This document shows, piece after piece, positions 27,188 through 51,494 of a stretch of 64,000 bases of DNA. The notes under the pieces are model-generated. The model was not told the origin of the DNA, did not search any database, and was given only the letters and a program-made list of their open reading frames with translations. The translations under genes were made by a program, and so were the position numbers. Position 1 is the stretch's first letter. Every line of letters begins with the position of its first letter. The stretch lies in IMG/VR virus record IMGVR_UViG_3300034358_000008, positions 62,001 to 126,000 of that record; one strand, written 5' to 3'.

Positions 27188-27392
27188 TCTTCCAGCAGTT
27201 ATCCCACCATCATTTCACATACCCCTGGTATCGCCATATGGATCGACTGCACAAATGGTCCGTAATACCATGGCTAGGGTGTATGCTGGTATTATGTTAA
27301 TGGGTGTGACTCCAGGGGTAGCTCCAGAAGACCTTCCAAAGCATCGTAAGCTCATTGAGGACGTTCTGCATGTCACGAGTAAGCAAGGGTAA
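27180..27392 (+). CDS. Hypothetical protein
   Basis: AAGGA RBS. Confidence 0.55.
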   Translation: MTNLPAVIPPSFHIPLVSPYGSTAQMVRNTMARVYAGIMLMGVTPGVAPEDLPKHRKLIEDVLHVTSKQG

Positions 27393-27960
27393 GATCAAGC
27401 ACCTATGGGCATTGTACGGCGTTTGGGATATTGTTAGTCACCATCGGTTGATGGATGAATATACTCAATTCATTGCCACGGCAAAGCGATGGGAAGCGCG
27501 GTTGCATGACCCTAAGGTGGTTTCTCGGATATCGCGGTTCAGGGATGCAGTGGATCAACGTCTGGTTGAACCAATGGTTCAACAGATCGCTACCAAAGGT
27601 TACTACGATGGTTGCCGTAAGTTGGATAGTGAGTTTGATTTAGAAGTGTTCATTGATATCAAACGGATGGAAAACCTAACGCACCTGACCTATTCCCGTG
27701 GGAAGCATCACCATCATTCCCTGAAAGATAAAGTTATTACTTACGACATAAAGCCCGATATCCTAGAGGCGATGTCAAAACCAGTCATACGTAAGTCAAC
27801 TATGTCTGGTGCGATTTATGCAGAAGGTAGCCTTGACCGTATAGCGCATCTCGACATTGCCGACACCTACCCTAAGACAATTACCGTGACCGATGAAGAA
27901 TGGCTTGAACGGGAGTTGTGGGTTATTCACGGGAGATGTGATGAGACGTCCTCAACGTAA
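27370..27960 (+). CDS. SKGK-leader mosaic protein with DnaB-like and PolB motif A-like fragments
   Basis: MSRVSKGKIKHL; KGYYDGCRKLDSEFDLEVFI...RGKH; LDIADTYP. Confidence 0.6.
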   Translation: MSRVSKGKIKHLWALYGVWDIVSHHRLMDEYTQFIATAKRWEARLHDPKVVSRISRFRDAVDQRLVEPMVQQIATKGYYDGCRKLDSEFDLEVFIDIKRMENLTHLTYSRGKHHHHSLKDKVITYDIKPDILEAMSKPVIRKSTMSGAIYAEGSLDRIAHLDIADTYPKTITVTDEEWLERELWVIHGRCDETSST

Positions 27961-28186
27961 AGACCTCTACTATGGTTTCAGGAGTCAGGACTATGCGATG
28001 AGACCTGAATATTTTTACGGTCGTCAGTTAAGGACCAGTAAACCTGAACGTGATTGTCAATACGATCTTGAACGCAATGACGTGTGTTACGATGAGGGAG
28101 ATGGACCTAGGCATTGGATGTCTTTAACCGTTGCTCGTGACAACCAGTGTCAGCGTGGTAGGCATGAAAACTTCTATGCTCCATAA
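27941..28186 (+). CDS. Hypothetical protein, RxRxE paralog family
   Basis: YYGFR...ARDNQCQRGRHE; GGGAG RBS. Confidence 0.6.
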   Translation: MRRPQRKDLYYGFRSQDYAMRPEYFYGRQLRTSKPERDCQYDLERNDVCYDEGDGPRHWMSLTVARDNQCQRGRHENFYAP

Positions 28187-28390
28187 AATGCGCGCCCGGC
28201 GCATAAGTAATTCTAGGTAAAGCAATTTACATCGATAAATTAGTTTATCTAAAGAGCTTTTGTAATTTGCTTTTTAGATAAATTACTTAGATATAAATAG
28301 TATATTATGAGAGGGGGCCTTGGGGGCCCTCGAATAATATTCCTTATTCTTAGTATAGCAAGAGCTATACGCATTATGCCCTATGGGAGT
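28187..28390. repeat. AT-rich intergenic region with nested inverted repeats
   Basis: TAAGTAATT/AATTACTTA, AGCAATTTACA/TGTAATTTGCT (imperfect), GATAAA/TTTATC, GTATAGC/GCTATAC and others. Confidence 0.7.
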
Positions 28391-28394
28391 TAAC

Positions 28395-30338
28395 ATGCAA
28401 CATTACTATCGCGTTAAGCGTGCCAATGGACTTGTGTCTACCTTACACACTTACTGTGACTGGGACAAAGTCATAGCGGAGTACGGAGATGATCTAATCG
28501 GGGAAATGAATGGTCGTGGAGTATTCCAACGCATCAATGTTCCATCTGCTATCCGTGGTCAAATCAATGAGCTATTACTTTCCATGAATGAAAATAACAT
28601 TCTTGAGGTTAATCAAAAGATCACTGAACTACATGACAGTGTGTTGAAGCGTGAAGAACCATTACCGGATTATCGATTCCATCAGTACTCCTTAATGCAG
28701 CTACAACAGGATTACTATAACGAGGTAATCATTCCATCCCTATATCCAGAGGTAAAATGCAAAGTGTGTGAATCCCCTATGTTGGAAAGTGTATTCCCTG
28801 ATCTGTTCTTCAAGTTAGACGCTATGAAAAATAAAGTACAAGCTGATCCTAAGGGTAATCCAGTACGTACCGATATACAACTGATCCTACCTGACTTCTT
28901 CAAGAATGTAGGTGGTCAAACAGTCGTTGATACCGATGCAGTCGATGAACGTAATCGTCGTATAGCAATGAGACGTACTGCTGATGCTGTATTCAGTGGT
29001 CATAAACCGGGAACTACTCCTGATCCAGTGATTGATAAACGAGTGGATGAATTCAGTGCTATGTTTGAAGCACAGTCTGTAACTACCCCTGAAGAAGGTG
29101 GTATTACTGTCGTCCTACCGTATAGCGGGATCGAACTAAATTTGAAAGCACCGACTCAAGAAGATATGTACGCTTCAACAACTACAACTTTTGAATTCCT
29201 TGATCGGATTGGCATTAACCTTTTCGGAGAAGAATGGAAGAACATGAGAACCCCTAGACCCGTGGAACTGTCTAAGACAATCGAACCAGTGGTTCAGAAG
29301 ACCGCTTACGAACTGTGGCTGGAAGATGGTAACGTGGGTGAGATCGAAGATTACATTAGCGAATGTGGTCGGTATCGACGGTCTCCTTCGCTTTACCCTG
29401 AAGACTTCAAAGAAACCGTTAAGTATTTCCATAAGCAAGGTGGCCACAGTGTGGTCATCCGTAAAGATAACTACGGTGGTTACGCGCTGAGTGTTTACCC
29501 AGCTAAGACTAAAGACACATGCAAACGGCCAGAAATTAAAGGGGTAATCCTTAAAGGTTCTAAACCCCCAATCCAAATTGATGATGGTGAAGTACGTTCC
29601 CATATCAAGAATTTCGTAGAAGCTCAATACGAACCACATCTTGCCGCACAGGTACTCGAGAAATTGGATACGATTGCTGAAGTAGAGAAGAAACCACTCG
29701 TGGCCATCCTGCCACCCCATCTGAGCCGTATCATCGATTCATTGAAGTTCGGTAAAGGTCACATCGAAGCTGCTGTTGCTATGCTCAAAGACATTCAGAG
29801 TAATAATCCTACAGTAGCAGAGTCCGGTGAATATGACCAAGTTAAGGTTGATACCGAATTCACTACTGGTTATGAAGCCGTCTTTGAAGAAATAGCTCGC
29901 GAAGAGCAGGTAAAAGTAGATGCCGCTTCAACTGTACCTTCCTTGGCCCAATACGACGCTGTCCTTGAGCAGCTTACATGGGAAGCCGAACGTCGCATTC
30001 TGATCGGTACTAGCTCCTACGGTATTCAAGAACAGTTCCTTCGTTTCCTGAAACGTTGTGATGAAGAACAATTGAATACAGCTACACCATCGGCTTACGA
30101 TCGTGAACACTTCGACAAGATCTATAAAACTAACCGTGACAGTATCGGTTACATGTTGGCTACGGTGTTGACACCACATCTGGAGAACGCTGCTCATCGT
30201 CGAGAGTACATGGTCGATGGTACCGAGAACAATGTGCTCCGCGTATCACGTATTTGCCATGGTCGTAAAGGTGCTTCGTATCGTCCATTGGTAACCATTC
30301 GGTTTGTCAAAGGTTTCTTCAATATCGAAATGCATTAA
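28395..30338 (+). CDS. Large mosaic protein with chimallin-like, tail-fibre-like and DNA-polymerase-like segments
   Basis: About 650 aa; GGGAG RBS; motifs detailed in findings. Confidence 0.65.
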   Translation: MQHYYRVKRANGLVSTLHTYCDWDKVIAEYGDDLIGEMNGRGVFQRINVPSAIRGQINELLLSMNENNILEVNQKITELHDSVLKREEPLPDYRFHQYSLMQLQQDYYNEVIIPSLYPEVKCKVCESPMLESVFPDLFFKLDAMKNKVQADPKGNPVRTDIQLILPDFFKNVGGQTVVDTDAVDERNRRIAMRRTADAVFSGHKPGTTPDPVIDKRVDEFSAMFEAQSVTTPEEGGITVVLPYSGIELNLKAPTQEDMYASTTTTFEFLDRIGINLFGEEWKNMRTPRPVELSKTIEPVVQKTAYELWLEDGNVGEIEDYISECGRYRRSPSLYPEDFKETVKYFHKQGGHSVVIRKDNYGGYALSVYPAKTKDTCKRPEIKGVILKGSKPPIQIDDGEVRSHIKNFVEAQYEPHLAAQVLEKLDTIAEVEKKPLVAILPPHLSRIIDSLKFGKGHIEAAVAMLKDIQSNNPTVAESGEYDQVKVDTEFTTGYEAVFEEIAREEQVKVDAASTVPSLAQYDAVLEQLTWEAERRILIGTSSYGIQEQFLRFLKRCDEEQLNTATPSAYDREHFDKIYKTNRDSIGYMLATVLTPHLENAAHRREYMVDGTENNVLRVSRICHGRKGASYRPLVTIRFVKGFFNIEMH

Positions 30339-30349
30339 GGGGTAAAGCC

Positions 30350-31568
30350 ATGAGCTGCTTGTCTTTGGGTAATTGCGGAAGTTGCTGGGATAATCCATGC
30401 ACTTGCGGTATGAAAGGTTTTAGCGATACAACACTTGAATGCTTACGCACTGACGAGCTGCTGGTACTCCAAGCTAAGATCACTTCAATCATTAACAAAC
30501 GTAGCCAGTCGGTTAGCTATGCCGCCCATACAACGGGTAAGGTAATCGACCGGTCTCACCATTCAGTTATTCAACACATCAATGGTAGTCCATTCGATGT
30601 ACTCACCACCAAACATAAAGGTTAATTCAATGCCAACTTTCGAAACCACTGAAAAGAACATCAACTTGAACGCCACTATGCAAGATGCCATCGATGAAGG
30701 TCGTGGTTTGGTATTGACGGTTGGTGTGAATAACTATGCTAAGCTGTCGATTGAAGCAGCAGTAGAAGAGGAGACTACCAATGCCCGTTGAGCGTGATGT
30801 AATCGTAGAAGCCTTGGGTGCAATGACTACACCTATCGAAATGGGTATCTTGTTGCAAGCGAGTTATGAAGACGGCATCCCACTGACTAACCATCAGGCT
30901 CGTGAGATCGCCCGTATCTCGGAAAAGTGTATTCAGATTGATGGCTTTTACACCATGAACAATATGACTGATGGTAAAGGGACTGTCTTCACTTTCTTCA
31001 ATCGCGAAGGATTGATTCTTAGTACCATCATCCTTAATTTTCCTAACGTAGCCGTTGAGCGTAAGATTCCATCGTTGCGTGATGTGAAGACGTGGTTTAA
31101 TTACATCGGTTACCATAACGAACGTATTGAAATTAAGATGCTTCAGACTCTGATCGAATCACACATCCGCGATGGCGGTAGCTTCAACCACTTCATTACA
31201 TCAAATGCATTGACCTTCACTCTCCGTATGAATGGTCATGTTAAATCCCGTTATGAATTTATGCGTGAGGATCTATCAGCGTGAGTAATCCAGGTATCGG
31301 TTTTGCAGAACACCAACGCACTGTGATCTTTATGTGCCGTGAGACTATCACGTCGATCATGAAAGAGACTGGCGTTAATACACTTAAAGGCTTCAACAAT
31401 CTTGCCCAACAAATGGTTAAGGTTATTGGTGCTGAGCGTGGCATTAAGATCAAAGAAGGCGAAGAACATCTGTGGGCACTGGGCACGTTGGCTAAAGACG
31501 ATGCCCCGTATCTGGCTAGTTACCTGACTGGTAATGAGCGTTCTGAGATCGTAGACCTGCGTGCTTAA
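30350..31568 (+). other. Hypothetical ORFs 30350-30625 (Cys-rich), ~30630-30791, 30781-31284, 31281-31568
   Basis: Same-strand packed ORFs. Confidence 0.6.
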
Positions 31569-31610
31569 GTCTACTCAGCTGTAGAACAATATGTTTCACT
31601 AATCAATTGC

Positions 31611-32600
31611 TTGGAGCTTTACTTGATGACCCCTTACGATTTTGAAAAACCAACTGGCCCAGTAAAAACATGTTTGATCTTTGCCGGTGGTGCTGGTCTT
31701 AACGTAGCAACCCATTTGGTGGACCTGCCTAACGTCCACTGTATTGATACCTGTGACAAGAACCTGGTTGATGCACACAAGAAGACCAATGTGTTCCTGA
31801 CCAAGGGTACGCGTGGTGCCGGTAAGAACCGTAAATACATCTTGCCTCTGATCCGTCCTCAATTGCCAGACATCATGGCGACTATCCCAGATGCAGACTT
31901 CTACATTCTCTGCTATTCGTTGGGTGGTGGTTCGGGTTCGACTCTTGCTCCATTGATTACCAACCAGCTGGCTCAACGTGGTGCTTCGTTTGTAAGCTTC
32001 GTAATCGGTGCAACTGAATCTCCTGAGGTTCTGCAAAACGACACTGATACCATGAAGTCGCTTGAAGCGATTGCTATGCGTATGAAGCTGCCAGTCGTTG
32101 TGAACTACACCCCTAACGTAAATGGTCTCACTTTCGATGCCATTAACCGCGGTGTTGCAGAGAACATCCGTCGTGTGGTTTGCCTGACTAATGGTAACCA
32201 TGGTCGCTTGGACGTACATGACGTATCCAACTGGGTACGCTTCACTGATAAACATACGCAACTGATGCCGCAGGTATGTGAACTGCATATCGAGACCAGC
32301 CGTAAAGATGCTGAAGGTATCCCTGAACCCATCGCTACAGCTAGTCTGTATCTGGATGAGTCCAAGGAATTCGCTTTCGGTAACCCTGTAGCGCGCACTG
32401 TAGGTATTATGAAAGCAGATGATACCGATGTGACGGATGATCAGATGCACTTCGTGATCAACTCCGTAGGCGTCGTAGAGATCATGAAAGGTATTGCTGA
32501 TACCCGCACCGAACAAGTCCGTAAGCAAGCAATGTTCGTACAACGTAACCCGCTGCTCGATCCAGACGACAACATCGATGACGATGGCATGGTAGTCTAA
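31611..32600 (+). CDS. phuZ: Phage tubulin PhuZ
   Basis: FAGGAG loop, GAGKNR, tubulin signature SLGGGSGS, LDVHD, acidic C-terminal tail. Confidence 0.92.
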   Translation: MELYLMTPYDFEKPTGPVKTCLIFAGGAGLNVATHLVDLPNVHCIDTCDKNLVDAHKKTNVFLTKGTRGAGKNRKYILPLIRPQLPDIMATIPDADFYILCYSLGGGSGSTLAPLITNQLAQRGASFVSFVIGATESPEVLQNDTDTMKSLEAIAMRMKLPVVVNYTPNVNGLTFDAINRGVAENIRRVVCLTNGNHGRLDVHDVSNWVRFTDKHTQLMPQVCELHIETSRKDAEGIPEPIATASLYLDESKEFAFGNPVARTVGIMKADDTDVTDDQMHFVINSVGVVEIMKGIADTRTEQVRKQAMFVQRNPLLDPDDNIDDDGMVV

Positions 32601-32637
32601 ACATAAACGCCCTACCTTCGGGTAGGGCTTTATTCCG
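32601..32637 (+). terminator. Intrinsic terminator
   Basis: GCCCTACC-TTCG-GGTAGGGC. Confidence 0.8.
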
Positions 32638-32649
32638 TTAGGAGTTAGT

Positions 32650-33202
32650 ATGAACGAAATACTAGTTGAAGACCAAGACCTTAGTCCGGGTTACCCAGGG
32701 GATTTCCTCCTCATTGTTAAACATGTAACAGATCAATTCGTTACTGTAGCAACCACTTATCCTAGTGCACTGTCGCACGAAGAAATGTGGATACGTAGTT
32801 ACAAATACGTTGGTCCAACAGTCTTCAATGAAGAAACCGATATGTTCCATGTAACTTATCAACGTCACCACTGAGGTTACTATGCCGAACTGTAAAGAAG
32901 GTGAAGGCCTCTGTTATATCTCACCTGATGTATTCGAAACAACCGCTCTTGTAAAAGGAACTCGTTACACAGTCATCCTCTTGGGAGATGGCGATGTAGT
33001 AGTCCGTGGTTATGCCACCGTCGGTAAGAGTGAGTTTGATGAAGACTTCCGTATTCATTTAGCTGATGATAACCAACGTGCATTTGTGTCTATGAAGTTA
33101 CCGGTGTTCAGTACACGATACATACACAACTTCGATATCATCATCCGTGATGAAGAGCGAACTCTAATCATGCTTCCTAACGTGGGTGCTCCGCGTGGCT
33201 AA
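32650..33202 (+). other. Hypothetical ORFs 32650-32874 and 32882-33202
   Basis: AGGAG and GAGGT RBSs. Confidence 0.6.
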
Positions 33203-33656
33203 AGTTACTTTCCTTAACTGTTGGAATGCTGAGAAGTACCCTCTCCCAGTTCCGGTAGTGAGCTTTAACGAGTGGAACGGTCTAGAGCCGGGTCAACGCC
33301 ACACCTACCCACTCGGAACACACCACAAAGACGTACAGCGGATCTACTGTGATGACGTACCCGATGCACCGGATAACACTTACCGGGTATTCGACTACAT
33401 TGATGCCATCAAGATCCTCACGTTCTTGGATAAGTATCCAGGTGAAGACATTCTGGTCCATTGTGCAGCAGGGGTTAGTCGCTCCCCAGCCTTGGTCAAG
33501 TTCATGATCGACTACTTCGGGTACACACAAGACCTCGAGTTGAATGGTAGTCCTGATGCATTTAAGTGTCACAATACTCAGGTCTACTATACTTTGAAAC
33601 GGGCGATCCTAGATCACCCTAACATTCAAAAACGTCTAAAGGAAGCTAACCAATGA
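33186..33656 (+). CDS. Protein tyrosine / dual-specificity phosphatase
   Basis: P-loop LVHCAAGVSRS (HCx5R). Confidence 0.85.
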   Translation: MLRVAKVTFLNCWNAEKYPLPVPVVSFNEWNGLEPGQRHTYPLGTHHKDVQRIYCDDVPDAPDNTYRVFDYIDAIKILTFLDKYPGEDILVHCAAGVSRSPALVKFMIDYFGYTQDLELNGSPDAFKCHNTQVYYTLKRAILDHPNIQKRLKEANQ

Positions 33657-35749: not shown

Positions 35750-35750
35750 C

Positions 35751-35800
35751 AGCATAAAGCCCAGCCGTAGTGGCTGGGCAATATGTCCTTTCTTTTTTCA
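35751..35800. terminator. Bidirectional terminator
   Basis: GCCCAGCC-GTAGT-GGCTGGGC plus T-run. Confidence 0.8.
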
Positions 35801-36751: not shown

Positions 36752-36771
36752 TATGTATTGAGGAATAACTG

Positions 36772-39455: not shown

Positions 39456-40310
39456 ATGAACCAACCACGCACAATCGGAATGATGATTAACCATCATGAG
39501 ATCGAACACACTTTGACTTCAATGGCAGATGTGATTCGTAACGCAGCCTACAAAGTTGCCACAGCCAGATATCCAATCGGTCATAGTCAACGAGATGAGT
39601 TCTTCGATGAAACAGGAACTCTATTGGCTTACGACGAGATGTCGATTAAAAGCTTACTCAAAGATGCACTGGAACATTACCTTCAATTCAATGCGGGTAT
39701 GCAGAATCCGCAGGCAATCGAATTCAACTATTACCTGAGTGATACATTCAAGCTGGTCCATGATCACATCAACTCGGAACCACACGTACTGAGTTTCCTT
39801 TCAGCTCAGTTCGCGATGGCGTGTGGTAATCTAGCTGGGATGTTATCTCCAGTTATAGAAGACCTGTCTCGTAGCGGACAAGGGATTGAGAAGGTTGAAT
39901 CGTTTACCATGAATACGGATGAATCCTATTACTTGGTGTACGGTGAGAATCATGAGAGTGTTGAAACTTACGATCCCAAAGACGATGATCTCAAGAGTAT
40001 GGTGATTAACGATACTCCAGAAGTCCTAGCTAACTGGGAAGTAAAGAAAAGACAAATCCGTGAGCAGGAAGATAACCAAGCGTATGGCGAATACACTAAA
40101 GCCCTTAAGAAAGCAGTAGATGAAGCAATCGATAACCCAACTCAACCATTGTGGAAAACGACTATCCCAAGGGTTCGTTTCAACGGTATTAGGGATACCT
40201 CGGTATTACCTATCATTGAAGCGCACCATGGTCCTACTGAACACGGCCATAGTTGGGGCGTCAACGTTACTATGCCACCTGCCATATTCCCGGAGCTAGG
40301 ATTAAAATGA
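39456..40310 (+). CDS. Hypothetical protein with a C-terminal tail-sheath-like peptide
   Basis: IPRVRFNGIRDTS matches the sheath N-terminus [13 protein letters not shown]. Confidence 0.65.
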   Translation: MNQPRTIGMMINHHEIEHTLTSMADVIRNAAYKVATARYPIGHSQRDEFFDETGTLLAYDEMSIKSLLKDALEHYLQFNAGMQNPQAIEFNYYLSDTFKLVHDHINSEPHVLSFLSAQFAMACGNLAGMLSPVIEDLSRSGQGIEKVESFTMNTDESYYLVYGENHESVETYDPKDDDLKSMVINDTPEVLANWEVKKRQIREQEDNQAYGEYTKALKKAVDEAIDNPTQPLWKTTIPRVRFNGIRDTSVLPIIEAHHGPTEHGHSWGVNVTMPPAIFPELGLK

Positions 40311-40732
40311 TAGCCGTCACTAATTTGTTCATTGTAGGTGAACCTACGAATGGACCTTTCTTAGCTCAGCGATTCGTCACTGAGTTCGAACAACGTAAAA
40401 AGGAGATACACCATGACGTCGATTATCCAGAAGACCCCATGGTACAGAAGGTAATCGATTTCACGATAGCGAATGGTTTAGACCTGAGGAGGTTCCAGCG
40501 TAATGTCATCGATACATTCGATCAATATGCAATGACGTTCTTCGATGATGATCTGGTAGAGCAACTCATTGAAGAAGGTGAGTCTCCAGACATGCATGAC
40601 GTTATTCAGATCATCGCTGAGTTCCAGACTGAGAACCCAGGCTACATCGTGCAGAGTCTAATACCTTTGGATCTCAAGGGTGCATTCGGTTACGTAGTTA
40701 AGGCGACTCCAAATGGAAATACCGAAGTATAG
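40307..40732 (+). CDS. Hypothetical protein, paralog of 40713-41168
   Basis: Shared GP..A.R and PLDxxGxFG[YF]VV motifs. Confidence 0.65.
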   Translation: MIAVTNLFIVGEPTNGPFLAQRFVTEFEQRKKEIHHDVDYPEDPMVQKVIDFTIANGLDLRRFQRNVIDTFDQYAMTFFDDDLVEQLIEEGESPDMHDVIQIIAEFQTENPGYIVQSLIPLDLKGAFGYVVKATPNGNTEV

Positions 40733-41168
40733 CTTTATCACGATGGTTCCTTGGGCTGGACCTATCATGGCTGAACGTTGGAAGATTGATCTAACTGAAG
40801 CCATGGGACGGGTAATCGAAGAATACGAGTTCTTGATGAAACGTCATGCGGCACCTAAAGGTGACTTCAGTATCTACAGTCGTATGGCCCAATGTAAGTC
40901 AAAGGCTGAACTAGCTATCGAACTGATGAACGTATCAGTCTCACTCTTCGATTCGTTTCAGTATGAGATCCGTGATACTTACCGTGAAAACTTCAGGGAT
41001 ACCCATTACCCAGATGAGTTCTTTGAATGTGCTGATACGGTATCAGTTAAGGAAATCTTGACAGAGTTCTACAAGTTACATCCTGAAGTAACGGTCGTTA
41101 CTATGATGCCATTAGACTTCGATGGAACGTTTGGATTCGTAGTTATCCCCAAAGATATGAATCCATAA
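40713..41168 (+). CDS. Hypothetical protein, paralog of 40307-40732
   Basis: Same shared motifs. Confidence 0.65.
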   Translation: MEIPKYSFITMVPWAGPIMAERWKIDLTEAMGRVIEEYEFLMKRHAAPKGDFSIYSRMAQCKSKAELAIELMNVSVSLFDSFQYEIRDTYRENFRDTHYPDEFFECADTVSVKEILTEFYKLHPEVTVVTMMPLDFDGTFGFVVIPKDMNP

Positions 41169-42024: not shown

Positions 42025-42030
42025 CCAGAA

Positions 42031-42072
42031 TGGGCTACCTCCGGGTAGCCCACTTCTACCCTTTCTTTTTTT
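42031..42072 (+). terminator. Intrinsic terminator
   Basis: GGGCTACC-TCCG-GGTAGCCC plus T-run. Confidence 0.8.
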
Positions 42073-42110
42073 ACTCAGCATCCCTCTAGTATGTATTTCT
42101 GGAGGTTCTC

Positions 42111-44270: not shown

Positions 44271-44456
44271 TGGATAAATTCAAAGACAAAATTGACGGTA
44301 TCGTCGAAGGTCTCCACATCTTTAAACCGCAGTCTTGGCAACATCGCAGTCAGGGGGATGCAAAAAGGGTACTCATGGCAATCCTTACCTTAAGAGAAAA
44401 CCTAGTCGGTCTGTCTCAAGAAGATTTTGAAAGAACTATCCTTAAGGCCCTTGAGT

Positions 44457-44491
44457 AATAGAACCCCTTTCAAGTTTATATCATGCACTCG
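44457..44491 (+). promoter_or_regulatory. Early promoter
   Basis: AATAGAA-N13-TATATCAT. Confidence 0.7.
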
Positions 44492-44536
44492 TATCCTAAA
44501 CAGATGTGAGTGCATCTATTTCGTCTTGAGGTTTAT

Positions 44537-44707
44537 ATGACCAAGAATGATCCTGAAATCCGAAAGCTTTTTGAACGTATGCGTAAGTTCACCCGTAATA
44601 ACAAGGTTGTGATGATCACAGCCAAAGCCTCTCCGATGACTCAAGCAGAAATCGATAGGGCTAACTCCATTCCTTACACCTGTGATTACATTGGGATGCT
44701 TCGATGA
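44537..44707 (+). CDS. Mini-protein resembling DnaB helicase motif fragments
   Basis: IRKLFERMRKFT...VVMITA; CDYIGML; GAGGT RBS. Confidence 0.5.
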   Translation: MTKNDPEIRKLFERMRKFTRNNKVVMITAKASPMTQAEIDRANSIPYTCDYIGMLR

Positions 44708-45848
44708 CATTTAACGTATCTATCGTAGATAAGGTCTATGGTGAATGGTATCTAATCGCACCAACCAAAAATGATCTATGTATGCTGCTCACCAGACTTG
44801 AAGCTGAAGACGCCGTTGAGCGCTACAAAGTAGTAGGTCACGATGGAAAACATTATGCGGCCATCGCCTATGAATTTGGGTGGATGCAAGATAATTACAA
44901 GAAGGGCTATTGAATGAACGATGCAGCCAAACTGAAAGAACTGATGACCCCAGCTAAGATGAATGGTGCGGTCTACGATAACCTATTTCAACTGGCACGT
45001 TGGGGTGCTCGTGAAGTAGGTGAGATCCCATCCAAGGGTCACATGCAAGAACTGGTTCAGAATAAATGGGTTCGGTTCAATGGGGATGAGGAGAAGTGCT
45101 GGACCATCACTGACGCTGGCCTACAAGCATTTCTGGAAGCTTACTCTAAGATCCCTAACCCACACTACAAGATCTTTGGTACCCTCCGTATCGGCTTTGC
45201 AGAGCGTTGTGGTAATGGTGAACTGGATGGTACGCCTATCCACTGTTTGGGTGGTTGCTTTGATTGGGCACGTGAAAACGTCTTCCTTAATAAGGTACTG
45301 AACTGGGCTGAGAGCTTCGGTTCTTATGACTACGCCACATTCGACTTCATTCATCCAGTGACTAAGGTTAAGACCCACTTGAAACCGGGTGACTGGGTTG
45401 TCCTGTCCGAAGACCATAACCACACTGTTCACAAACTGAGTGAAGATAATTGATGGACCTCATTAAAACAGCTGATTCTCGTTTCATGCGTAAAGGCGAC
45501 CAAGGTATCTTTGTTAATCATGTCCCTATGACTAAAGAATACCACATCACTGTTGAGAAAGAGTATTCGTGTGCAATCACCGAAGCTGTTGCCGGTTATC
45601 AAATTACTTGCAATCTGTGTAATGATCTCGGTTCGCATGCGGTACATAGTAAGTCGTTTGACATGTTCAGCGGTGGCTATACTACCGTTTACGCACTCGT
45701 TCCACGTGATGAGTACATCCGCCGAGCTAATACCATCCATGCACACGACGTGCTTACCTTAACCGATAAGTTCACCTTGGATATGGAAACACTTAATACT
45801 CGACAGGCTAAACGACTGGAGGTTGCTAATGTTACCGCATCCGTTTAA
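44704..45848 (+). other. Hypothetical ORFs 44704-44913, 44914-45453, 45450-45848
   Basis: Coupled ORFs. Confidence 0.65.
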
Positions 45849-47199
45849 GACAGATACATGGGTTGAAGGTGAGCGTTCGAATCACGCTAATCTTTGCAAT
45901 GAGATCGATCTACCTCAATCGGGAAGCGATATCTGCGTGTTGGGTATGAAGCCTTCGATGTTGAAGTACATAGCGCTCAATAACCAGATCCATCAACATC
46001 AGGTACATGGTCGGGTATGGAATCTGATTGGTGACCCTAACCTGAAGATGCTCTTTAGTTCATACTCGGGCTCAACTCCAGATCAACGCATGGACCCAGA
46101 AGCTGTAATGGATCTGGCTCGTGAACTCTATGATGAACATGAGGAAGATCTGACTGAGCTTTACAACAATTTAGGTTCACTGCGCACTATCCGTGCAATC
46201 GAACAACTTGAACGACTAAAACTCTTCGGCTCACTCGCAATCAATCAAAACTTCAAGGAACAAGGTATCATGCAATCCACAACTGAACAAATTGCAAAAC
46301 TGACCCAAGCTCAACCACACGGTCTTCGCCGTGGCGAACTGGCAATGATCTCCTCTACTGCCAATACCGGTAAGTCATCAGATACAGATGAGCTGATTCG
46401 TCTGCTGGAAGAAGCTGTTCCGGCTGTGGATAATATTGGTCCTGCCGGCACGCAGGGTGATCGTGGGGAACACGCACCTAAACTGCAATCGTTCGACAAG
46501 CCTTCTAAGGTTAAACGTAAGAAGTCCAAGCCTAAATCTAACCATCTCCCGAACATGCGTAACGCTCGTACCAAACGTGTACTGGGTGCAACCATCCTGA
46601 ACATGCTGGGTAAGGTTCAACAAGATACCCAAGACAGCTACAAGCGTTCTCTTTTGAAAGAGATTCCACTGGCTGACTTCGTAGAACTGGCATCGGGCGA
46701 GAAGCTGCCGGACTATCAGGCTAACCTGTTGAACGCAATGCAGGCTAAAGCTGATCCAACTGCCCCAATCGTTGAACGCGTTAACGCTGGCACCGGTATT
46801 GGGCTGGACATCATTCAGAAAGCATTCGATGGTTCTGTGGCAACTGATGAGCGCTTGATCGCCAATGACCAATTCGTAGAGGCATTGTATCCAGGTACAC
46901 TCGAGCGTGAGGCAAATGTAGGTCGTGGTCTGACTGCACATGTCTTGACTTTCGATGATGCACCAGAACAACTGTCTAACGAAGAACGTCTGGCTATCTT
47001 CGAAAAGAATGTTGACGAAGCTTTGGTTAAGTACATCTCCCCGGAACTGTTCCCAGAAGAACTGTCCGAAGAGAAACGTACTGAAATCATCGCATTGGTT
47101 AAGGCAGATGTGATGGAACGCAATTCGTCTATCGATCGTCAAAGCATCGTAACCACCGCAATGAGTATCCTGCATCCGCTGGACCCAATCGCTGGCTAA
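45829..47199 (+). CDS. Mosaic protein with RNR-, PolB-, DnaB-, collagen- and terminase-like motif fragments
   Basis: GGAGG RBS; motifs detailed in findings. Confidence 0.65.
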   Translation: MLPHPFKTDTWVEGERSNHANLCNEIDLPQSGSDICVLGMKPSMLKYIALNNQIHQHQVHGRVWNLIGDPNLKMLFSSYSGSTPDQRMDPEAVMDLARELYDEHEEDLTELYNNLGSLRTIRAIEQLERLKLFGSLAINQNFKEQGIMQSTTEQIAKLTQAQPHGLRRGELAMISSTANTGKSSDTDELIRLLEEAVPAVDNIGPAGTQGDRGEHAPKLQSFDKPSKVKRKKSKPKSNHLPNMRNARTKRVLGATILNMLGKVQQDTQDSYKRSLLKEIPLADFVELASGEKLPDYQANLLNAMQAKADPTAPIVERVNAGTGIGLDIIQKAFDGSVATDERLIANDQFVEALYPGTLEREANVGRGLTAHVLTFDDAPEQLSNEERLAIFEKNVDEALVKYISPELFPEELSEEKRTEIIALVKADVMERNSSIDRQSIVTTAMSILHPLDPIAG

Positions 47200-47232
47200 A
47201 CATAATCCCCTCCTTCGGGAGGGGCTTTATTT
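47200..47232 (+). terminator. Intrinsic terminator
   Basis: CCCCTCC-TTCG-GGAGGGG. Confidence 0.8.
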
Positions 47233-47249
47233 CGTAAAGGAGTTTAAAT

Positions 47250-47696
47250 ATGCGTCACTTCGCATTCCACAAGATCGCTATGCTTCGTCGTCACTTCGGG
47301 GTGAATGGTGAAGACCTGTTGGCTATCTACGATACTGCAATCGCAGGTTATCAACCCCTCGCTGAACTTAGCTATATTACCCTGTCGACGTCTAAGGTCG
47401 TTTGGGATCGTATTGCGGCTAACCCTAGTATCGAACGGGCAAAGCATCCAGGCACGAACGTAGACTGCCTGAAGCTATTCGGTGACGTGTATCTGCGTAA
47501 ACAGAACCGCGTTATAGATGAAGACGTTATTTGGCTCAGTAGTCTCGGTTGCTATGTTCCGACTGTACGGTATATGCACAATCAATTCCAGCATCTGATT
47601 GCAAGTAGTAGCTCTACCAAGAAGATCATTGCTTACGCAGAATCCTTGGCAGATAAACTGAAAGCACATATCGACGAAAACAAGGTGAAGTTGTAA
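47250..47696 (+). CDS. Probable degenerate paralog of the nucleotidyltransferase-like ORF at 2238
   Basis: ITLS..W and VPT...H...LI similarity; no DxD motif. Confidence 0.45.
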   Translation: MRHFAFHKIAMLRRHFGVNGEDLLAIYDTAIAGYQPLAELSYITLSTSKVVWDRIAANPSIERAKHPGTNVDCLKLFGDVYLRKQNRVIDEDVIWLSSLGCYVPTVRYMHNQFQHLIASSSSTKKIIAYAESLADKLKAHIDENKVKL

Positions 47697-49240
47697 TGGC
47701 TGATTTCCTGACCCTGCTAAATAAACGGAATGACAAGATTAATGTGTTCGTCACTCCTACCGGTATGATGCCTCTACCCAATGCTGGTGCCCCTGACAAA
47801 CGTTACCTCTGGTCGTTCCATACTAAGCATCCCATGCAGACTGGTTTGTATGAGGGGATTATCCTCAGTGCAGCCGATAAGTTAACAGCGTACGCACGCT
47901 TCCTTGAAGTACTGCGCCCCAATACTGACCACACGTATCACTACGAAGGTGTTCAGTGGTACAGCACCTGCGAAGGGGAAGATAACTACCCTGAACGCCA
48001 ACACGCAGTCCTTATCGCAGCTAAAGCAACAGACTGAGGTTAACATGCATCATATTGAAGTTGCTCTGAAACAACGTCGTGAAGCTAAGGCTAACACTCC
48101 ATTCGATCTGGATAAGATCGAAAAGCAACATGCGTACATCAACTCCCCACAATATTACTTCTCCATTAGTAGTATGGGTTCGGCTAACCAGAAAGTACTG
48201 ATGGATGAAACCGATGTTCAACACACCGCTTAACGTCACAGCTAAAATTCCTAAGGCTAAATCTGCTCCTAAGGTTAAGCCCTTGCCCACCGCGCAAGAT
48301 CTGAATATTACCTACGAGCGCATCGTTAATACCAGTATCGATATCTCTGGGTATAGAAGTTACTTCTATCAGTTCGTTCAGACAGGTGAAGTAGGGGATA
48401 AAGAAATGGAGAAGATCATCATCTCCAAACCGGATATGGATCAAGCCATTGCTGCATTCGAACAATACTTCTTCCGGGGTGATTACTACAAGAATGCGAA
48501 GATCGCCGTAGAGTGCATCGGAATTGATGTTAAACCTCCTCGGACTGATCCTATCGTGATGGCCTACTAATATGCCTACCTTTACTAATATCGATGAAGC
48601 TGAAGTGGTTATTGATGGCCAGGCTAAATACCTGTATCACTTCTTTAATCGTGGGGAAGCTTTCATGATCCACTCCATGGGGATCAAGGTTACGGATTAT
48701 GTGGATTGTCACCATGTGATGGAAGCAATCATCTCAGCGGAAAGTTTTGATGAGGCTCAAAATATCCTTATTAAAGCTGAGATCTCACATGCTCAACAAC
48801 GGTACCACTTCGACGTATATCTGACAGGTGTTGATTTGGTACCTTCCCGTGAGAACCCAATCATCATGATTAGTTATAAACAATCCGTGTTCTAAGGAGA
48901 TAGAATGTCTACCGTTCTTGATATTGTTGATAGCGACAATGTGATTCATCGCATTACTGTAACCTCCCATAGTCGTGAAGACTTGCCTGAGGGTAGGACC
49001 TGGCTGTGGAAATATGAAGCATCTGATATCACCGATCACGATATGGTCAATGGCGTTATCTTGAGTAGTGAGTCCTTCGACGAGGCAAACCGGATCTTTA
49101 TCGATCATCTCCATCGAACTACTCCACACTACAATATCCCAAACTACGTTGGTACCAAATGGATTGCACGTATCGAGGGAGAGGACTATTTCCCAGAACG
49201 TGAAGATCCTATCCTGATGACGGATTACATTAACGCTTAG
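47696..49240 (+). other. Tandem paralog family (47696-48037, 48205-48570, 48572-48895, 48905-49240) plus small ORF 48045-48233
   Basis: Shared I[IL]S...[DE]A and GxDxxPxRxxP[IV]xMxxY motifs. Confidence 0.7.
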
Positions 49241-49247
49241 TAAAGAC

Positions 49248-49296
49248 GGCATATGCCCCCTCCAATCGGAGGGGGCTTTATGTCATTTTTCTTTTA
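49248..49296. terminator. Bidirectional terminator
   Basis: GCCCCCTCC-AATC-GGAGGGGGC. Confidence 0.8.
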
Positions 49297-50368
49297 GTTC
49301 ACGAATCAACTCTTGGATCTGTTTGCGGAACTGTTTCACATAATCGGTATTGCCCATCGTATTGAAGATCTGATCGTGAGAACCCTCAATCAAGTCAATC
49401 ATGATAGCGTTCAATTGAGACGCATCGTAACCATGATTGCGCAGGACCATACGACACAGGTATCGGATAGCAGGTAACCTCGCTAGTGTAATAGCCCACT
49501 GATTCTGAAGAGTCACAGGCTCACGTGGAAGCTTGAGTACTTCGAACAAGTTAGTATCCACCAACATAGGAACGATTGCGGCTAAGCCTTCAACTTCAAT
49601 ACCCTTAAGGATAGCTTCGAAGTTAATGAACTCTTCCAGTCGAACTAACTTAGAAGTCATGTCGGTTAAATAGAAAGGATGTGACACAGGGAATGTAGGT
49701 GTAGCGATACCCTGAGACTGTCGATCGAGTCTATTAAAGAAAGCGATATCCAAGAAGCTATCAATCATGTTAGGTAATACGTAACTACCCACAAAGCGAT
49801 AAGCGTTCTCAAATTGGATCACTCCTAAGGACTCTTGCCATCTACGCCAGTAACGGTATTGAACCATTAGCATGGGGATGTTGATTTGAACCACACCGAA
49901 TGCACGACCCGGAGTAGAGTTGTTCATGATCGGTAGGGTACAGTCGGTACGCGTATGGTAAAGATACTTAACGGGTGTAAGTTCCCGCCAACGTTTACCA
50001 AGACCGACTGTGTCGAACTTATCGTAACTAGCAATCACCACTTCTTCAGATTGCGGACCCAGAGTAATACCCTTCGGATGAATCTTTCCTTTATTAAGGG
50101 GAGTGGTGATACCGAAGTCTTTAAGGAACCCTCGCGACAATCGCTCAACCCGGTTAACCCATTCGTTGTCGTCGACATTGGTATTGATCACAAACTGCTG
50201 GATGATCAAAGCGAACATGTTCCTGGAGTCTACGTACTTGGGTGCCTTACGGTAGTATTGCTTGACATCGTGTATCAGTGTCTTGAACGTACGTCGTACG
50301 TAAAGCATATTAGGATCGAGTGCTTGCCCCAGTTTCCTGTTAGGCTGATCCCGGAAAAGTGCGTACAT
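49283..50368 (-). CDS. Conserved phiKZ-like protein (gp52-like)
   Basis: 361 aa; synteny upstream of chmA. Confidence 0.6.
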   Translation of the reverse strand: MYALFRDQPNRKLGQALDPNMLYVRRTFKTLIHDVKQYYRKAPKYVDSRNMFALIIQQFVINTNVDDNEWVNRVERLSRGFLKDFGITTPLNKGKIHPKGITLGPQSEEVVIASYDKFDTVGLGKRWRELTPVKYLYHTRTDCTLPIMNNSTPGRAFGVVQINIPMLMVQYRYWRRWQESLGVIQFENAYRFVGSYVLPNMIDSFLDIAFFNRLDRQSQGIATPTFPVSHPFYLTDMTSKLVRLEEFINFEAILKGIEVEGLAAIVPMLVDTNLFEVLKLPREPVTLQNQWAITLARLPAIRYLCRMVLRNHGYDASQLNAIMIDLIEGSHDQIFNTMGNTDYVKQFRKQIQELIRELKEK

Positions 50369-50444
50369 TTGGTTATCCCTATAAATTGTTAAAACTATAG
50401 AATGGGCCTAGTCAGTATATATCATTCTCTTCCTTTATAAGGGC

Positions 50445-50479
50445 AATAGAATTTATTTCAAGTTTATATCATAGCTGTA
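50445..50479 (+). promoter_or_regulatory. Early promoter
   Basis: AATAGAA-N13-TATATCAT. Confidence 0.75.
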
Positions 50480-50500
50480 CACTAACAGGAGATAATCGCA

Positions 50501-51494
50501 ATGAACATTTCCATTGTAGAGACTGAGAACTACGTACCTAATCGTATTCCTTTTGAACTCATTCGCATTAACTGGCTTTACACTGAAGTCAACTGGCAAC
50601 CTGCTCCCGGTAAATATGACGGAGTCAGTTGGAAGCGAGCCGGGGATGCCATTCAACGTCTTGTTAATAAAGTGCATCGTGGCGACACTATCACTAGCCT
50701 TGTTGTAACTACTCGAGGTAACTCCTATGACAACCGATGCTATTAGAGCAATGAGTATTCCTGATCGTTATACCTTAAACAGTAAAGCGCTGGTTGTTAT
50801 TAACGCAGTGTTCTCCGATGTACGCATGGTTATCCCAGCAGGTGCATCACGGGGTGTCTATATTGATGCAATCAACCGTATCAGCAATCGAATCCGTAAA
50901 GGTGATACCATCACCAGTGTTGTCGTAACCAAACGTGGAGTAGTCTAATGTCAGCTGATGCGATTAGAGCACTGGTAGAGTTCCCAGTACAAGCCTTTAA
51001 AGAATCCGCTCAACGTTGCCAGATGAGCGCAGGCTTACGTAAGCAACAGGAAATCCATCGCCCTAGCCGAGCTACAGCTTATACCGGTTTAGAGCCGTCC
51101 TTTAAAATACTCACCCCTGATAACATCGATGATGAGTTGAAGAACGTTCAGATCGTTGGCCGCTTGAAGCGAGTAGATCATGAAACTGAGTGATATCCCG
51201 TTTGATCAATTGCAGACTACCGAAGATTGGCTGACTAGCGCCAATGGTTTACCCGGACGTATCTTCAGTATCAGTCATCATGAGGATGGCAAGTTCTACA
51301 AGACTTACTTAACCATTCGGTGGAAAGGTCCAGAGGGTATCAAAGTCTCCATCGCTGAATGGCCTGATGATTGCAGAAAGATTGAAGTAGATCTCTCCAA
51401 CAAAGGTCTGCTATGTCGTCCTTATGCTGAAGATCAAATCAAGCGTCGTGAACGTGAGATCGAATTCTATAAGCAGTTCAGTAAGGTCGAATAA
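50501..51494 (+). other. Small early ORFs 50501-50746, 50727-50948, 50948-51193, 51180-51494
   Basis: RBSs; internal tandem duplication. Confidence 0.65.

What the first reader, a model, noticed from the sequence alone, without database searches (positions are those of the whole stretch)
27370..51193. Candidate system: accessory 'mosaic' proteins built from short motif copies of essential phage proteins
Seen: at least four accessory ORFs (27370, 28395, 39456, 45829), and probably 44537 and 50948, carry in-frame 10-50 aa pieces resembling highly conserved motifs of core phage proteins. In-window pairs are directly checkable. Sheath [13 protein letters not shown] vs IPRVRFNGIRDTS. Polymerase NFKINNNSYSGAT vs NLKMLFSSYSGST. 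Polymerase EVKGVGLRDSKVP vs EIKGVILKGSKPP. Terminase GRGLTVPIMQFDE vs GRGLTAHVLTFDD. Chimallin DTLGNPIRSDV vs DPKGNPVRTDI. Shared residues often use different codons (TCC TAC TCA GGA vs TCA TAC TCG GGC), consistent with selection on the peptide or a donor in another phage. Established: some bacterial sensors, e.g. Avs STAND NTPases, recognise conserved phage proteins such as terminase. Inference: these ORFs may be decoys that titrate immune sensors, or dominant-negative peptides against co-infecting chimalliviruses. Recombination debris is the null hypothesis.
Basis: partly seen in the sequence, partly recalled or inferred. Interest (0 to 1): 0.92.

Follow-up and report, generated by a model that had tools for sequence, protein, structure and literature searches.

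The report
Core-protein snippets inside chimallivirus accessory genes
A few small genes of this nucleus-forming jumbo phage really do carry short, conserved copies of segments from its helicase, portal and tail sheath.

Summary
The window is part of a 325-kb Pseudomonas-type chimallivirus from a peat metagenome, related to 201phi2-1 and Viktualia. All ten quoted peptides are present. Four of the five in-window pairs (6-8 identities in 11-13 residues, against polymerase, terminase and chimallin) are at chance level, and family profiles never recover them.

Three pieces hold up against shuffled and reversed controls:
- ORF 27370 carries about 50-100 aa of the C-terminal ATPase core of the DnaB-like helicase (profile E 2e-16).
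- ORF 45829 carries about 55 aa of the portal's C-terminal region (E 2e-6).
- ORF 39456 has the sheath N-terminal motif PRVxFNGIxD in a disordered tail. The motif is conserved in 8 close orthologs and in the gp236 family (E about 1e-3).

ORF 39456 is the homolog of phiKZ gp47 (Imp2), a nuclear-import adaptor, not an anonymous accessory gene. ORF 28383 has only a faded capsid-protein remnant, which is clear in its Viktualia ortholog (E 6e-9). ORFs 44537 and 50948 carry nothing supported.

The genes are unrelated families with syntenic orthologs, not a system. The most likely role of the pieces is partner docking by interface mimicry, as in microProteins. The decoy and dominant-negative readings remain untested.

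The parts
27370..27960 (+). 196-aa protein of a conserved small-protein family. It has an N-terminal 'MSRVSKGK...' module, a helicase-derived segment and a conserved tail. In 201phi2-1 (gp52 + gp53) and Viktualia (CDS0241 + CDS0242) the same parts are split over two ORFs.
   Evidence: Eleven homologs of 152-285 aa all carry a PF20307 hit. The AlphaFold2 model is poor (pLDDT 42) and the helicase-like part is unstructured on its own.
27568..27756 (+). Segment homologous to the C-terminal part of the divergent DnaB-like helicase ATPase core (201phi2-1 gp197 residues about 411-470; Pfam profile positions 265-328 of 356). The motifs KGYYDGCRKL..E.DLE and R.K are nearly invariant in the small-protein family.
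   Evidence: Pfam PF20307 E 1.6e-14, 53.8 bits against a cut-off of 26. PHROG 3213. tblastn to the helicases of many chimalliviruses. blastp 49-51% identity over 49 aa. Family profile to gp197 E 2e-16. phmmer gp197 to the window E 1e-10. Best shuffled score 11.7 bits against 56.7 observed.
28383..30338 (+). 651-aa fast-evolving protein of the 201phi2-1 gp54 / Viktualia CDS0243 family. Function unknown.
   Evidence: 43% identical to the 592-aa ortholog in L007 and 18-25% to gp54 and CDS0243. No Pfam or PHROG family.
28860..29132 (+). Weak remnant of a major-capsid-protein segment (MCP gp200 residues about 128-214). The block 'EEGGITVVLPY' matches MCP 'IEGGVVQVLPY'.
   Evidence: blastp E 0.002 in a small database and 0.099 in the ORFeome. 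phmmer with the MCP does not detect it. The Viktualia ortholog has a clear copy: 29/75 identities, E 6e-9, with 'VLPYIAVMK[ED]VH'.
29235..29366 (+). Motif 'KTAYELWLEDGNVGEIEDYISE', which resembles a repeat found at least four times in the 201phi2-1 tail fibre gp230. Suggestive only.
   Evidence: blastp E 0.006-0.18 in a six-protein database. phmmer with gp230 hits the orthologs at E 0.01-0.06. The motif is conserved in the L007 ortholog.
39456..40310 (+). Imp2 homolog (phiKZ gp47 / PhiPA3 gp44 / 201phi2-1 gp79 family). Residues 1-165 form a folded domain, residues 188-226 a helix, and residues 233-284 a clade-specific disordered tail that phiKZ Imp2 lacks.
   Evidence: blastp to phiKZ gp47 28% over 163 aa, E 1e-14. 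tblastn to PhiPA3 orf44 E 2e-16. Synteny. Literature. AlphaFold2 with 28 homologs.
40164..40202 (+). Short linear motif IPRVRFNGIRDTS, shared with the sheath N-terminus and with the gp236 family.
   Evidence: 10/13 identities to the window sheath and 11/13 for ortholog P0013. Conserved in 8 close orthologs, with mean pairwise identity 0.77 against 0.33 and 0.15 in the flanks. Absent from distant orthologs. Profile hits gp236 at E 9.6e-4 and the sheath at 2.7e-3; the best shuffled score was 11.2 bits against 16.0 and 14.6 observed. Pattern scan of IMG/VR.
13601..13639 (+). Sheath N-terminal motif [13 protein letters not shown] (residues 8-20 of the 702-aa sheath), the parent of the motif above. 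It is conserved from phiKZ-like to 201phi2-1-like sheaths.
   Evidence: [quoted passage not shown] Placing residues 8-20 inside the N-terminal extension is my inference.
45829..47199 (+). 456-aa protein of the 201phi2-1 gp88 / Viktualia CDS0277 family. Function unknown. A TTG start at 45823 is also possible.
   Evidence: Ortholog alignments. No Pfam or PHROG family.
46960..47154 (+). Segment homologous to the portal protein C-terminal region (201phi2-1 gp214 residues about 697-766). The pattern 'FE..VDEAL..YISPELFPEEL' is conserved in all four orthologs.
   Evidence: blastp 21/68 identities, E 5e-5 in a small database and 0.002 in the ORFeome. Family profile E 2e-6. phmmer with the portal hits the window at 0.0024, Viktualia at 1.1e-4 and L008 at 7.9e-4. 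Best shuffled score 8.6 bits against 23.3 observed.
44537..44707 (+). 56-aa conserved small ORF, with orthologs 201phi2-1 gp92 and a 56-aa ORF in L008. No supported core-protein piece.
   Evidence: Orthologs. The resemblance to helicase residues 375-412 gives only E 0.27 by profile, no better than the reversed database.
50948..51193 (+). 81-aa ORF with no detected relatives and no supported core-protein piece.
   Evidence: Its best hit is below the shuffled maximum.
17061..17153 (-). Lies outside the finding's range. Motif 'KKQTVHVVMDENDPDPLFTAELIQSVV' in ORF 16923-17441 (gp34 family), shared with portal gp214 residues 503-534, gp160 and gp84 of 201phi2-1.
   Evidence: Family profile hits the portal at E 4e-6 and gp160 at 1.2e-4. 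Best shuffled score 9.2 bits.

Best explanation
The interval 27-51 kb does not encode a coordinated 'mosaic decoy' system. It is a run of unrelated, lineage-specific chimallivirus genes, each with syntenic orthologs.

Shown:
1. Three of the six flagged ORFs contain a short segment that is truly homologous to part of a homo-oligomeric core protein.
   - ORF 27370 has the last third of the DnaB-like helicase ATPase core.
   - ORF 45829 has about 55 aa of the portal C-terminal region.
   - ORF 39456 has the N-terminal sheath motif PRVxFNGIxD in a predicted disordered tail.
2. ORF 28383 keeps only a faded capsid-protein remnant.
3. ORF 39456 is the Imp2 homolog, the UvsX-specific nuclear-import adaptor family. 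Its clade has added a roughly 110-aa tail to the Imp2 domain.
4. These segments are conserved islands of their families, kept at the peptide level while codons drift.
5. The other quoted matches (polymerase, terminase, chimallin) are chance.

Inferred: the pieces arose by partial duplication or illegitimate recombination from the core genes. They were retained because they let the small protein dock onto the parent oligomer, or onto the parent's partner, by interface mimicry. This is how eukaryotic microProteins work, and how BRC repeats mimic the RAD51 interface.
- The helicase piece would bind helicase subunits, acting as loader, regulator or inhibitor.
- The sheath-like motif would bind whatever the sheath N-terminal extension binds, most simply the sheath C-terminal domain.
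- The portal piece would bind the portal or a portal partner.
For: Identity and synteny.

Helicase piece.

Portal piece.

Sheath motif:
- 10/13 identities occur in 0.02 of shuffled proteomes.
- It is conserved in 8 orthologs with variable flanks and synonymous codon changes.
- It is also conserved in the gp236 family of 201phi2-1, Phabio and a close relative of the window phage.
- The profile hits gp236 and the sheath as its top two non-self hits, both above all 25 shuffled ORFeomes.
- The tail is predicted disordered.

Imp2 identity.

Unbiased test: 5 non-syntenic partial hits at E<=0.003 against 0 with reversed queries.

Chance level of the quoted pairs.

Precomputed Pfam hits on the syntenic genes of two relatives show no other partial core domain in this interval.

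Donors are oligomers, and the sheath extensions mediate inter-subunit contacts (PMC13250141).
Against: - No binding, expression or phenotype data exist. The phage is known only from one peat metagenome DNA run.
- The helicase-like protein does not fold confidently alone. That fits partner-dependent folding but equally fits a shallow alignment.
- By BLOSUM local score the window sheath/39456 pair is not proteome-wide significant. Its support comes from the identity count, ortholog conservation and the third family, gp236.
- The sheath is cytoplasmic whereas phiKZ Imp2 is imported into the phage nucleus, so a sheath-Imp2 contact has no obvious rationale. The shared partner may be something else.
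- Assigning the helicase piece to the H4 / arginine-finger region rests on my reading of DnaB motifs. No solved homolog was found.
- 201phi2-1 gp54 and the window ORF 28383 have largely lost the capsid piece. This shows that at least some pieces decay neutrally.
Confidence: 0.6

Rival explanations
1. The pieces are decoys that titrate bacterial sensors of conserved phage proteins (Avs-type and others), or dominant-negative subunits that poison the helicase, portal or sheath assemblies of co-infecting related chimalliviruses.
For: - Real pieces of portal, helicase, sheath and (in Viktualia) capsid protein exist and are conserved.
- All donors are oligomers, and a truncated interface copy could cap or poison such assemblies.
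- From my own knowledge: portal and capsid proteins are established triggers of some defence systems, and competition between co-infecting chimalliviruses is documented.
Against: - The terminase match that motivated the Avs link is chance (7/13).
- From my own knowledge, Avs-type sensors recognise large fold-level surfaces. A 13-55 aa piece is unlikely to compete with that.
- The pieces are about equally similar to helicases of distant clades (51% to a phiKZ-like phage, 49% to 201phi2-1). Nothing shows discrimination between self and competitor.
- ORF 39456 already belongs to a family with a known housekeeping role in import.
- There are no defence or anti-defence neighbours and no hits to known families.
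Confidence: 0.12
2. Recombination debris. Illegitimate recombination occasionally drops fragments of core genes into the hypervariable gene runs, and the fragments are neutral passengers in the process of decay.
For: - The capsid piece is clear in Viktualia CDS0243, faint in the window ORF 28383 and undetectable in 201phi2-1 gp54. That is a decay series.
- The modules around 26-28 kb are shuffled between relatives: the SKGK module and the helicase piece are fused in the window but split in 201phi2-1 and Viktualia, and Viktualia CDS0240 ends with a second partial copy.
- The terminase-like stretch of ORF 25647 and the SbcD-like stretch of ORF 27370 are marginal.
Against: - In the 27370 family the helicase motifs are nearly invariant across 11 or more divergent members.
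- The sheath-like motif is a conservation island with synonymous turnover and recurs in a second family across three phage lineages.
- The portal-like block is conserved in all four gp88-family orthologs, although the proteins differ greatly elsewhere.
Confidence: 0.18
3. Everything is chance similarity, picked out by reading many ORFs against many conserved motifs.
For: - Four of the five quoted pairs are at chance level.
- The window sheath pair alone is only borderline by alignment score.
Against: - Helicase E 2e-16, portal 2e-6 and capsid (ortholog) 6e-9.
- All these hits exceed every one of 25 shuffled ORFeomes and the reversed controls.
Confidence: 0.03

Closest known systems
Imp2 (phiKZ gp47 / PhiPA3 gp44), cargo-specific adaptor for import of the UvsX/RecA-like protein Nlp1 into the phage nucleus (bioRxiv 10.1101/2024.03.27.586873)
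   Same: ORF 39456 residues 3-165 align with phiKZ gp47 residues 26-168 (E 1e-14) and with PhiPA3 orf44 (E 2e-16). The genomic position is the same: after the gp43-46 homologs, before the gp48/gp49 homologs and the DNA polymerase.
   Different: phiKZ Imp2 is 178 aa and ends with the folded domain. The window protein has an extra helix and a disordered tail of about 50 aa carrying the PRVxFNGIxD motif and a conserved C-terminal 'PPAIFPELGL'. Import function was not tested here.
Divergent DnaB-like replicative helicase of chimalliviruses (Pfam PF20307; phiKZ gp118, 201phi2-1 gp197)
   Same: ORF 27370 matches profile positions 265-328 with the family's most conserved residues.
   Different: Only about 60 of 356 profile positions are present. 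There is no N-terminal domain and no Walker A or B region, so it cannot be a helicase. It is fused to an unrelated N-terminal module shared with other small ORFs.
MicroProteins / interface mimics. These are small proteins derived from part of an oligomeric protein that regulate it by forming non-productive complexes (for example Id proteins and LITTLE ZIPPER). BRC repeats mimicking the RAD51 polymerisation motif are a related case. This comparison comes from my own knowledge.
   Same: Small proteins that retain only a short, conserved segment of a larger self-associating protein. The donor proteins are all homo-oligomers.
   Different: No interaction has been shown. The segments are embedded in otherwise unrelated proteins rather than being stand-alone truncated paralogs. 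The setting is a phage.
Short linear motif mimicry by viruses (my own knowledge)
   Same: A motif of about 10 aa in a predicted disordered tail, conserved amid variable flanks, and shared between unrelated proteins.
   Different: Here the mimicked motif belongs to the phage's own sheath, not to a host protein.

Membership tests
Imp2 (phiKZ gp47 family) | Sequence homology to phiKZ gp47 / PhiPA3 gp44 | tested here: met
   blastp E 1e-14 over 163 aa. tblastn to PhiPA3 orf44 E 2e-16.
Imp2 (phiKZ gp47 family) | Conserved genomic position upstream of the gp48/gp49 homologs and the DNA polymerase | tested here: met
   Gene order in the window compared with 201phi2-1 and phiKZ.
Imp2 (phiKZ gp47 family) | Required for import of UvsX (Nlp1), and itself imported via Imp1 | not testable with these tools
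   Known only from genetics in phiKZ and PhiPA3.
Divergent DnaB-like ATPase (PF20307) | Score above Pfam's gathering cut-off | tested here: met
   53.8 bits against a cut-off of 26.
Divergent DnaB-like ATPase (PF20307) | Complete RecA-type ATPase core with nucleotide-binding motifs | tested here: not met
   Only profile positions 265-328 of 356 are matched. The full-length helicases align only over their last 50-110 residues.
MicroProtein-like interface mimic | Small protein retaining a segment of a larger oligomeric protein encoded by the same genome lineage | tested here: met
   Helicase, portal and sheath segments.
MicroProtein-like interface mimic | Physically binds the parent protein or its partner and modulates it | not testable with these tools
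   No multimer prediction and no experiment were available. The single-chain model of ORF 27370 was uninformative.
Decoy for terminase-sensing Avs-type sensors | Above-chance resemblance to terminase | tested here: not met
   GRGLT... pair has 7/13 identities, which is chance level. The 45829-family profile does not hit terminase. ORF 25647 against terminase is marginal (E 0.002-0.014) and is not confirmed by profile.
One co-functioning 'system' | Shared architecture, shared family, operon-like linkage or co-occurrence of the components | tested here: not met
   The six ORFs belong to six unrelated families spread over 24 kb between PhuZ, structural genes and the polymerase. Pieces are present or absent independently in relatives.

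The most novel reading that the evidence does not exclude
Chimalliviruses keep a small repertoire of microProtein-like genes built from interface segments of their own homo-oligomeric machines (replicative helicase, portal, sheath, capsid). They use them either to time their own assembly and replication or as dominant-negative weapons against co-infecting relatives. Within this repertoire, the PRVxFNGIxD motif, shared by the sheath N-terminal extension, the UvsX-adjacent gp236 family and the tail of the import adaptor Imp2, would link tail assembly to the nuclear-import machinery through one common binding site.
Probability: 0.15. Interest if true: 0.8.

Novelty: new variant of a known kind. 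Interest (0 to 1): 0.5.

Why it matters
Chimalliviruses still lack an identified helicase loader and primase (PMC13648687). How cargo is recognised for import into the phage nucleus is also unresolved.

A conserved small protein carrying only the last third of the helicase ATPase core is an obvious candidate helicase partner. A motif shared between Imp2 tails, the UvsX-adjacent gp236 family and the sheath gives a concrete peptide to test in binding assays.

More generally, the finding is a caution. Motif pairs with 6-8 of 13 identities are expected by the dozen in a 20,000-residue proteome. The true partial copies were found only with family profiles and controls.

Tried and rejected
- A second sheath match in the Imp2 tail ('HSWGVNVT' against sheath 662-673) has shuffle p = 0.14 and was dropped.
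- A BRC-like mimic of a UvsX polymerisation motif was considered. No PRVxFNGIxD-like sequence occurs in five UvsX homologs.
- The tail of ORF 39456 does not hit sheath genes of other phages by tblastn at E<=10. The search found only gp236.
- ORF 44537 as a helicase H3-region piece: profile E 0.27, no better than the reversed database.
- The SKGK N-terminal module as a terminase piece: a single-sequence hit at E 0.002-0.014 that the family profile does not confirm.
- ORF 27370 residues 153-165 against the SbcD-like nuclease (9/13; profile E 0.069): unresolved.
- The ORF 28383 family profile found neither MCP nor fibre. The MCP link rests on the Viktualia ortholog.
- The AlphaFold2 model of ORF 27370 was too poor for a fold search.
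- The PDB sequence search with the helicase found no homolog.
- Pfam found nothing for gp236, gp54, gp88, gp92, the Imp4-like pair or the SKGK ORFs.
- The ESM Atlas gave no usable lead for ORF 39456.
- Expression could not be checked. Only one DNA run (peat metagenome) holds the sequence.
- The search for related loci with gp236 returned only very close relatives.

Full report
**What the window is.** Megablast places the region in a Pseudomonas-type chimallivirus related to 201phi2-1 and Viktualia, at about 76% nucleotide identity in conserved genes. The only public run holding it is a peat metagenome. The same sequence is a 324,912-bp IMG/VR contig. Gene order is syntenic with 201phi2-1 and Viktualia and with two closer metagenomic relatives, L007 and L008.

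**Checking the quoted pairs.** All ten peptides exist where stated. Identities are 10/13 for sheath/39456, 7/13 for polymerase/45829, 8/13 for polymerase/28383, 7/13 for terminase/45829 and 6/11 for chimallin/28383. Nucleotide identity is low and codons are mostly different.

I counted 13-residue windows in a curated 111-protein set and in 150 residue-shuffled copies.

| Identities in 13 | Expected | Observed | Comment |
|---|---|---|---|
| at least 8 | 11.5 | 24 | about nine come from true paralog families or double counts |
| at least 9 | 0.45 | 8 | six are paralogs |
| at least 10 | 0.02 | 2 | one paralog pair and sheath/39456 |

In gapped BLAST the five pairs fall within the range of shuffled proteomes. 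So four of the five quoted pairs are ordinary chance matches. Only the sheath pair is unusual, and only by identity count.

**Ortholog conservation of the quoted motifs.**
- Against 201phi2-1 and Viktualia, the sheath-like and terminase-like motifs lie in clade-specific insertions or tails, and the two ORF 28383 motifs are not conserved.
- Closer relatives do keep 'IKGVILKGS', 'GRGLT' and a 'K..NS.YSGAT' block.
- Profiles built from these families never retrieve polymerase, terminase or chimallin at E<=1.
- Conservation within a family therefore says nothing about a link to those core proteins.

**The real pieces.** Family searches first showed that ORF 27370 carries a true fragment of the divergent DnaB-like helicase (PF20307, E 1.6e-14). 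I then compared the accessory ORFs with core proteins that lie outside the window, using 201phi2-1 (1-225 kb fetched).

The unbiased test was blastp of all 111 window ORFs against the 201phi2-1 ORFeome, with composition-based statistics.
- It gave five non-syntenic partial hits at E<=0.003: ORF 16926 to gp160, 25647 to terminase, 27370 to helicase, 39456 to gp236 and 45829 to portal. It also gave two relocated full-length paralogs.
- Reversed queries gave none at that level.

Family profiles sharpened this.

| Family profile | Hit in 201phi2-1 | E-value |
|---|---|---|
| ORF 27370 family | helicase gp197 | 2e-16 |
| ORF 45829 family | portal gp214, residues 709-764 | 2e-6 |
| ORF 16926 family | portal, residues 503-550 | 4e-6 |
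| ORF 16926 family | gp160 | 1.2e-4 |
| Imp2 tail | gp236 | 9.6e-4 |
| Imp2 tail | sheath N-terminus | 2.7e-3 |

The best scores in 25 shuffled ORFeomes were 8.6-11.7 bits, against 14.6-56.7 bits observed. The reciprocal search with 201phi2-1 core proteins agreed.

For ORF 28383 the capsid link is clear only in the Viktualia ortholog: 29/75 identities, E 6e-9, with a run 'VLPYIAVMK[ED]VH' that is identical at 11 of its 12 positions. In the window copy it is marginal. ORFs 44537 and 50948 have nothing supported. ORF 44537 is simply a conserved 56-aa gene, the gp92 family.

**ORF 27370.**
- Eleven metagenomic homologs of 152-285 aa share the architecture. It has an N-terminal 'MSRVSKGKxKHLWxLY' module, then the helicase-like block with nearly invariant KGYYDGCR, E, D, E and R.K, then a conserved tail.
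- In 201phi2-1 and Viktualia the same parts are split into two ORFs, and Viktualia CDS0240 ends with another partial copy.
- The block corresponds to the last 50-110 residues of full-length helicases.
- I read this region as H4 plus the arginine finger of DnaB-type ATPases. That is an inference, because no solved homolog exists.
- The protein cannot be a helicase. Alone it is predicted to be largely unstructured.

**ORF 39456.**
- It is the Imp2 homolog: phiKZ gp47 E 1e-14, PhiPA3 orf44 E 2e-16, same gene neighbourhood.
- In phiKZ and PhiPA3, Imp2 is required specifically for import of the UvsX-like protein Nlp1. It is itself imported via Imp1, and the gene lacks disruptive transposon insertions.
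- phiKZ Imp2 ends after the folded domain. The window protein adds a helix and a tail that AlphaFold2 predicts as disordered (residues 233-284).
- Within that tail, PRVxFNGIxDTS is a conservation island in eight orthologs. Mean pairwise identity is 0.77 against 0.33 and 0.15 in the flanks. Six of nine conserved codons differ synonymously between the window and L008.
- The same motif is conserved in the gp236 family, the gene next to UvsX. It reads [13 protein letters not shown] in 201phi2-1, APRIVFDGIKDGG in a close relative of the window phage and LPKVEFNGMRDGG in Phabio.
- It is also conserved in sheath N-termini from phiKZ-like to 201phi2-1-like phages.
- A degenerate pattern scan of IMG/VR found ten loci. 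Nine fall in these three contexts and the tenth is a stand-alone 80-aa ORF.
- In phiKZ gp29 the two extensions of each sheath subunit bind the C-terminal domain of a subunit in the next layer. The simplest shared partner would therefore be the sheath C-domain, but this is unproven.
- gp236 also contains a piece of the baseplate wedge protein gp149 (E 7.8e-7).

**ORF 45829.** The portal-like block (window residues 378-442) is conserved in all four orthologs, although the proteins differ by large insertions and deletions elsewhere. The terminase-like 'GRGLT...' motif sits just upstream of it and is unrelated to terminase by every test.

**Interpretation.**
- The set is heterogeneous. It comprises six unrelated families, interspersed with PhuZ, virion genes and the polymerase, and the pieces are gained and lost independently in relatives. 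Nothing supports one system.
- The donors of the real pieces are all homo-oligomeric machines (helicase, portal, sheath, capsid). The pieces are conserved islands, which argues against pure debris. The capsid remnant, by contrast, shows that some copies do decay.
- I therefore favour retained partial copies that act as docking modules by interface mimicry, comparable to microProteins.
- The decoy and dominant-negative ideas are not excluded, but they lose their main quoted support, the terminase match. They also have no positive evidence.

**Limits.**
- No expression, binding or phenotype data exist.
- Only 225 of 317 kb of 201phi2-1 were used as the core proteome.
- The window phage's own helicase, portal, capsid and gp236 genes were not retrieved.

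Noticed in passing
window 7962-8129, 25647-25850, 26608-26877, 26855-27187, 27370-27519 (all + strand): Five small ORFs begin with the same N-terminal motif M(x0-4)SKGK(R/x)(R/K)(Y/F/H)L. The family profile also hits 201phi2-1 gp24, gp25, gp52 and gp101, and a regex scan finds two Viktualia ORFs with the same start. Function is unknown. It may be a shared N-terminal module spread by recombination among small early genes.
   Followed up: partly
window 16923-17441 (-), motif at 17061-17153: The gp34-family protein shares a motif of about 30 aa, 'V.V.(I/M)D..DPDP..T...IQS', with portal gp214 (residues 503-534), gp160 and gp84 of 201phi2-1. gp34 itself has two copies. This is a second portal-derived or portal-shared element, and it lies outside the finding's range.
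   Followed up: partly
window 40253-40732 and 40713-41168 (+): Tandem paralogs (E 1e-7 to each other) sit directly after the Imp2 homolog. Both resemble phiKZ gp48 (Imp4, TopA import adaptor) weakly (E 0.001-0.006 in a 15-protein database). This is possibly a duplicated Imp4.
   Followed up: partly
L005 42608-43489 (201phi2-1 gp236, outside the window): gp236, the gene next to UvsX, is itself a mosaic. Residues 127-185 match the baseplate wedge protein gp149 (phiKZ gp87 homolog), E 7.8e-7, and residues 215-224 are the exact sheath 10-mer [10 protein letters not shown].
   Followed up: partly
window 27811-27882 (ORF 27370 residues 148-171 of 196) vs 60246-61424: 'AIYAEGSLDRIAH' in ORF 27370 resembles 'KIYAAGSFDRICH' of the SbcD/Mre11-like nuclease (9/13 identities, or 13/21 with a gap). 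The family profile hits 201phi2-1 SbcD gp121 at E 0.069. This is unresolved and may be chance.
   Followed up: partly
window 25647-25850 (+): Residues 5-53 resemble terminase large subunit residues about 319-365, a part of terminase lying just outside the window (blastp E 0.002, phmmer 0.014). The SKGK family profile does not confirm this.
   Followed up: partly
window 51764-53692 (-), 13550-15460 (-), 15714-16769 (-), 22818-23795 (-), 8346-9851 (+): Very long antisense ORFs (up to 642 aa) lie opposite chimallin, sheath and other real genes. A longest-ORF gene caller picks the wrong strand several times in this genome.
   Followed up: yes
window 50501-50746 / 50727-50948 and 48572-48895 / 48905-49240: Two pairs of adjacent small paralogs. 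The first pair shares 11/13 identities in 'GDTITS.VVT.RG', the second 9/13.
   Followed up: no
window 17524-18336 (+): A 270-aa ORF is 45% identical to 201phi2-1 gp35, which is annotated as an HNH endonuclease. It is a likely mobile endonuclease gene between the tail genes and the gp36 homolog.
   Followed up: no
window 40275-40307 (C-terminus of ORF 39456): A second conservation island, 'PPAIFPE(L/H)GL', sits at the extreme C-terminus of the Imp2 tail in the eight close orthologs. No match was found elsewhere.
   Followed up: no
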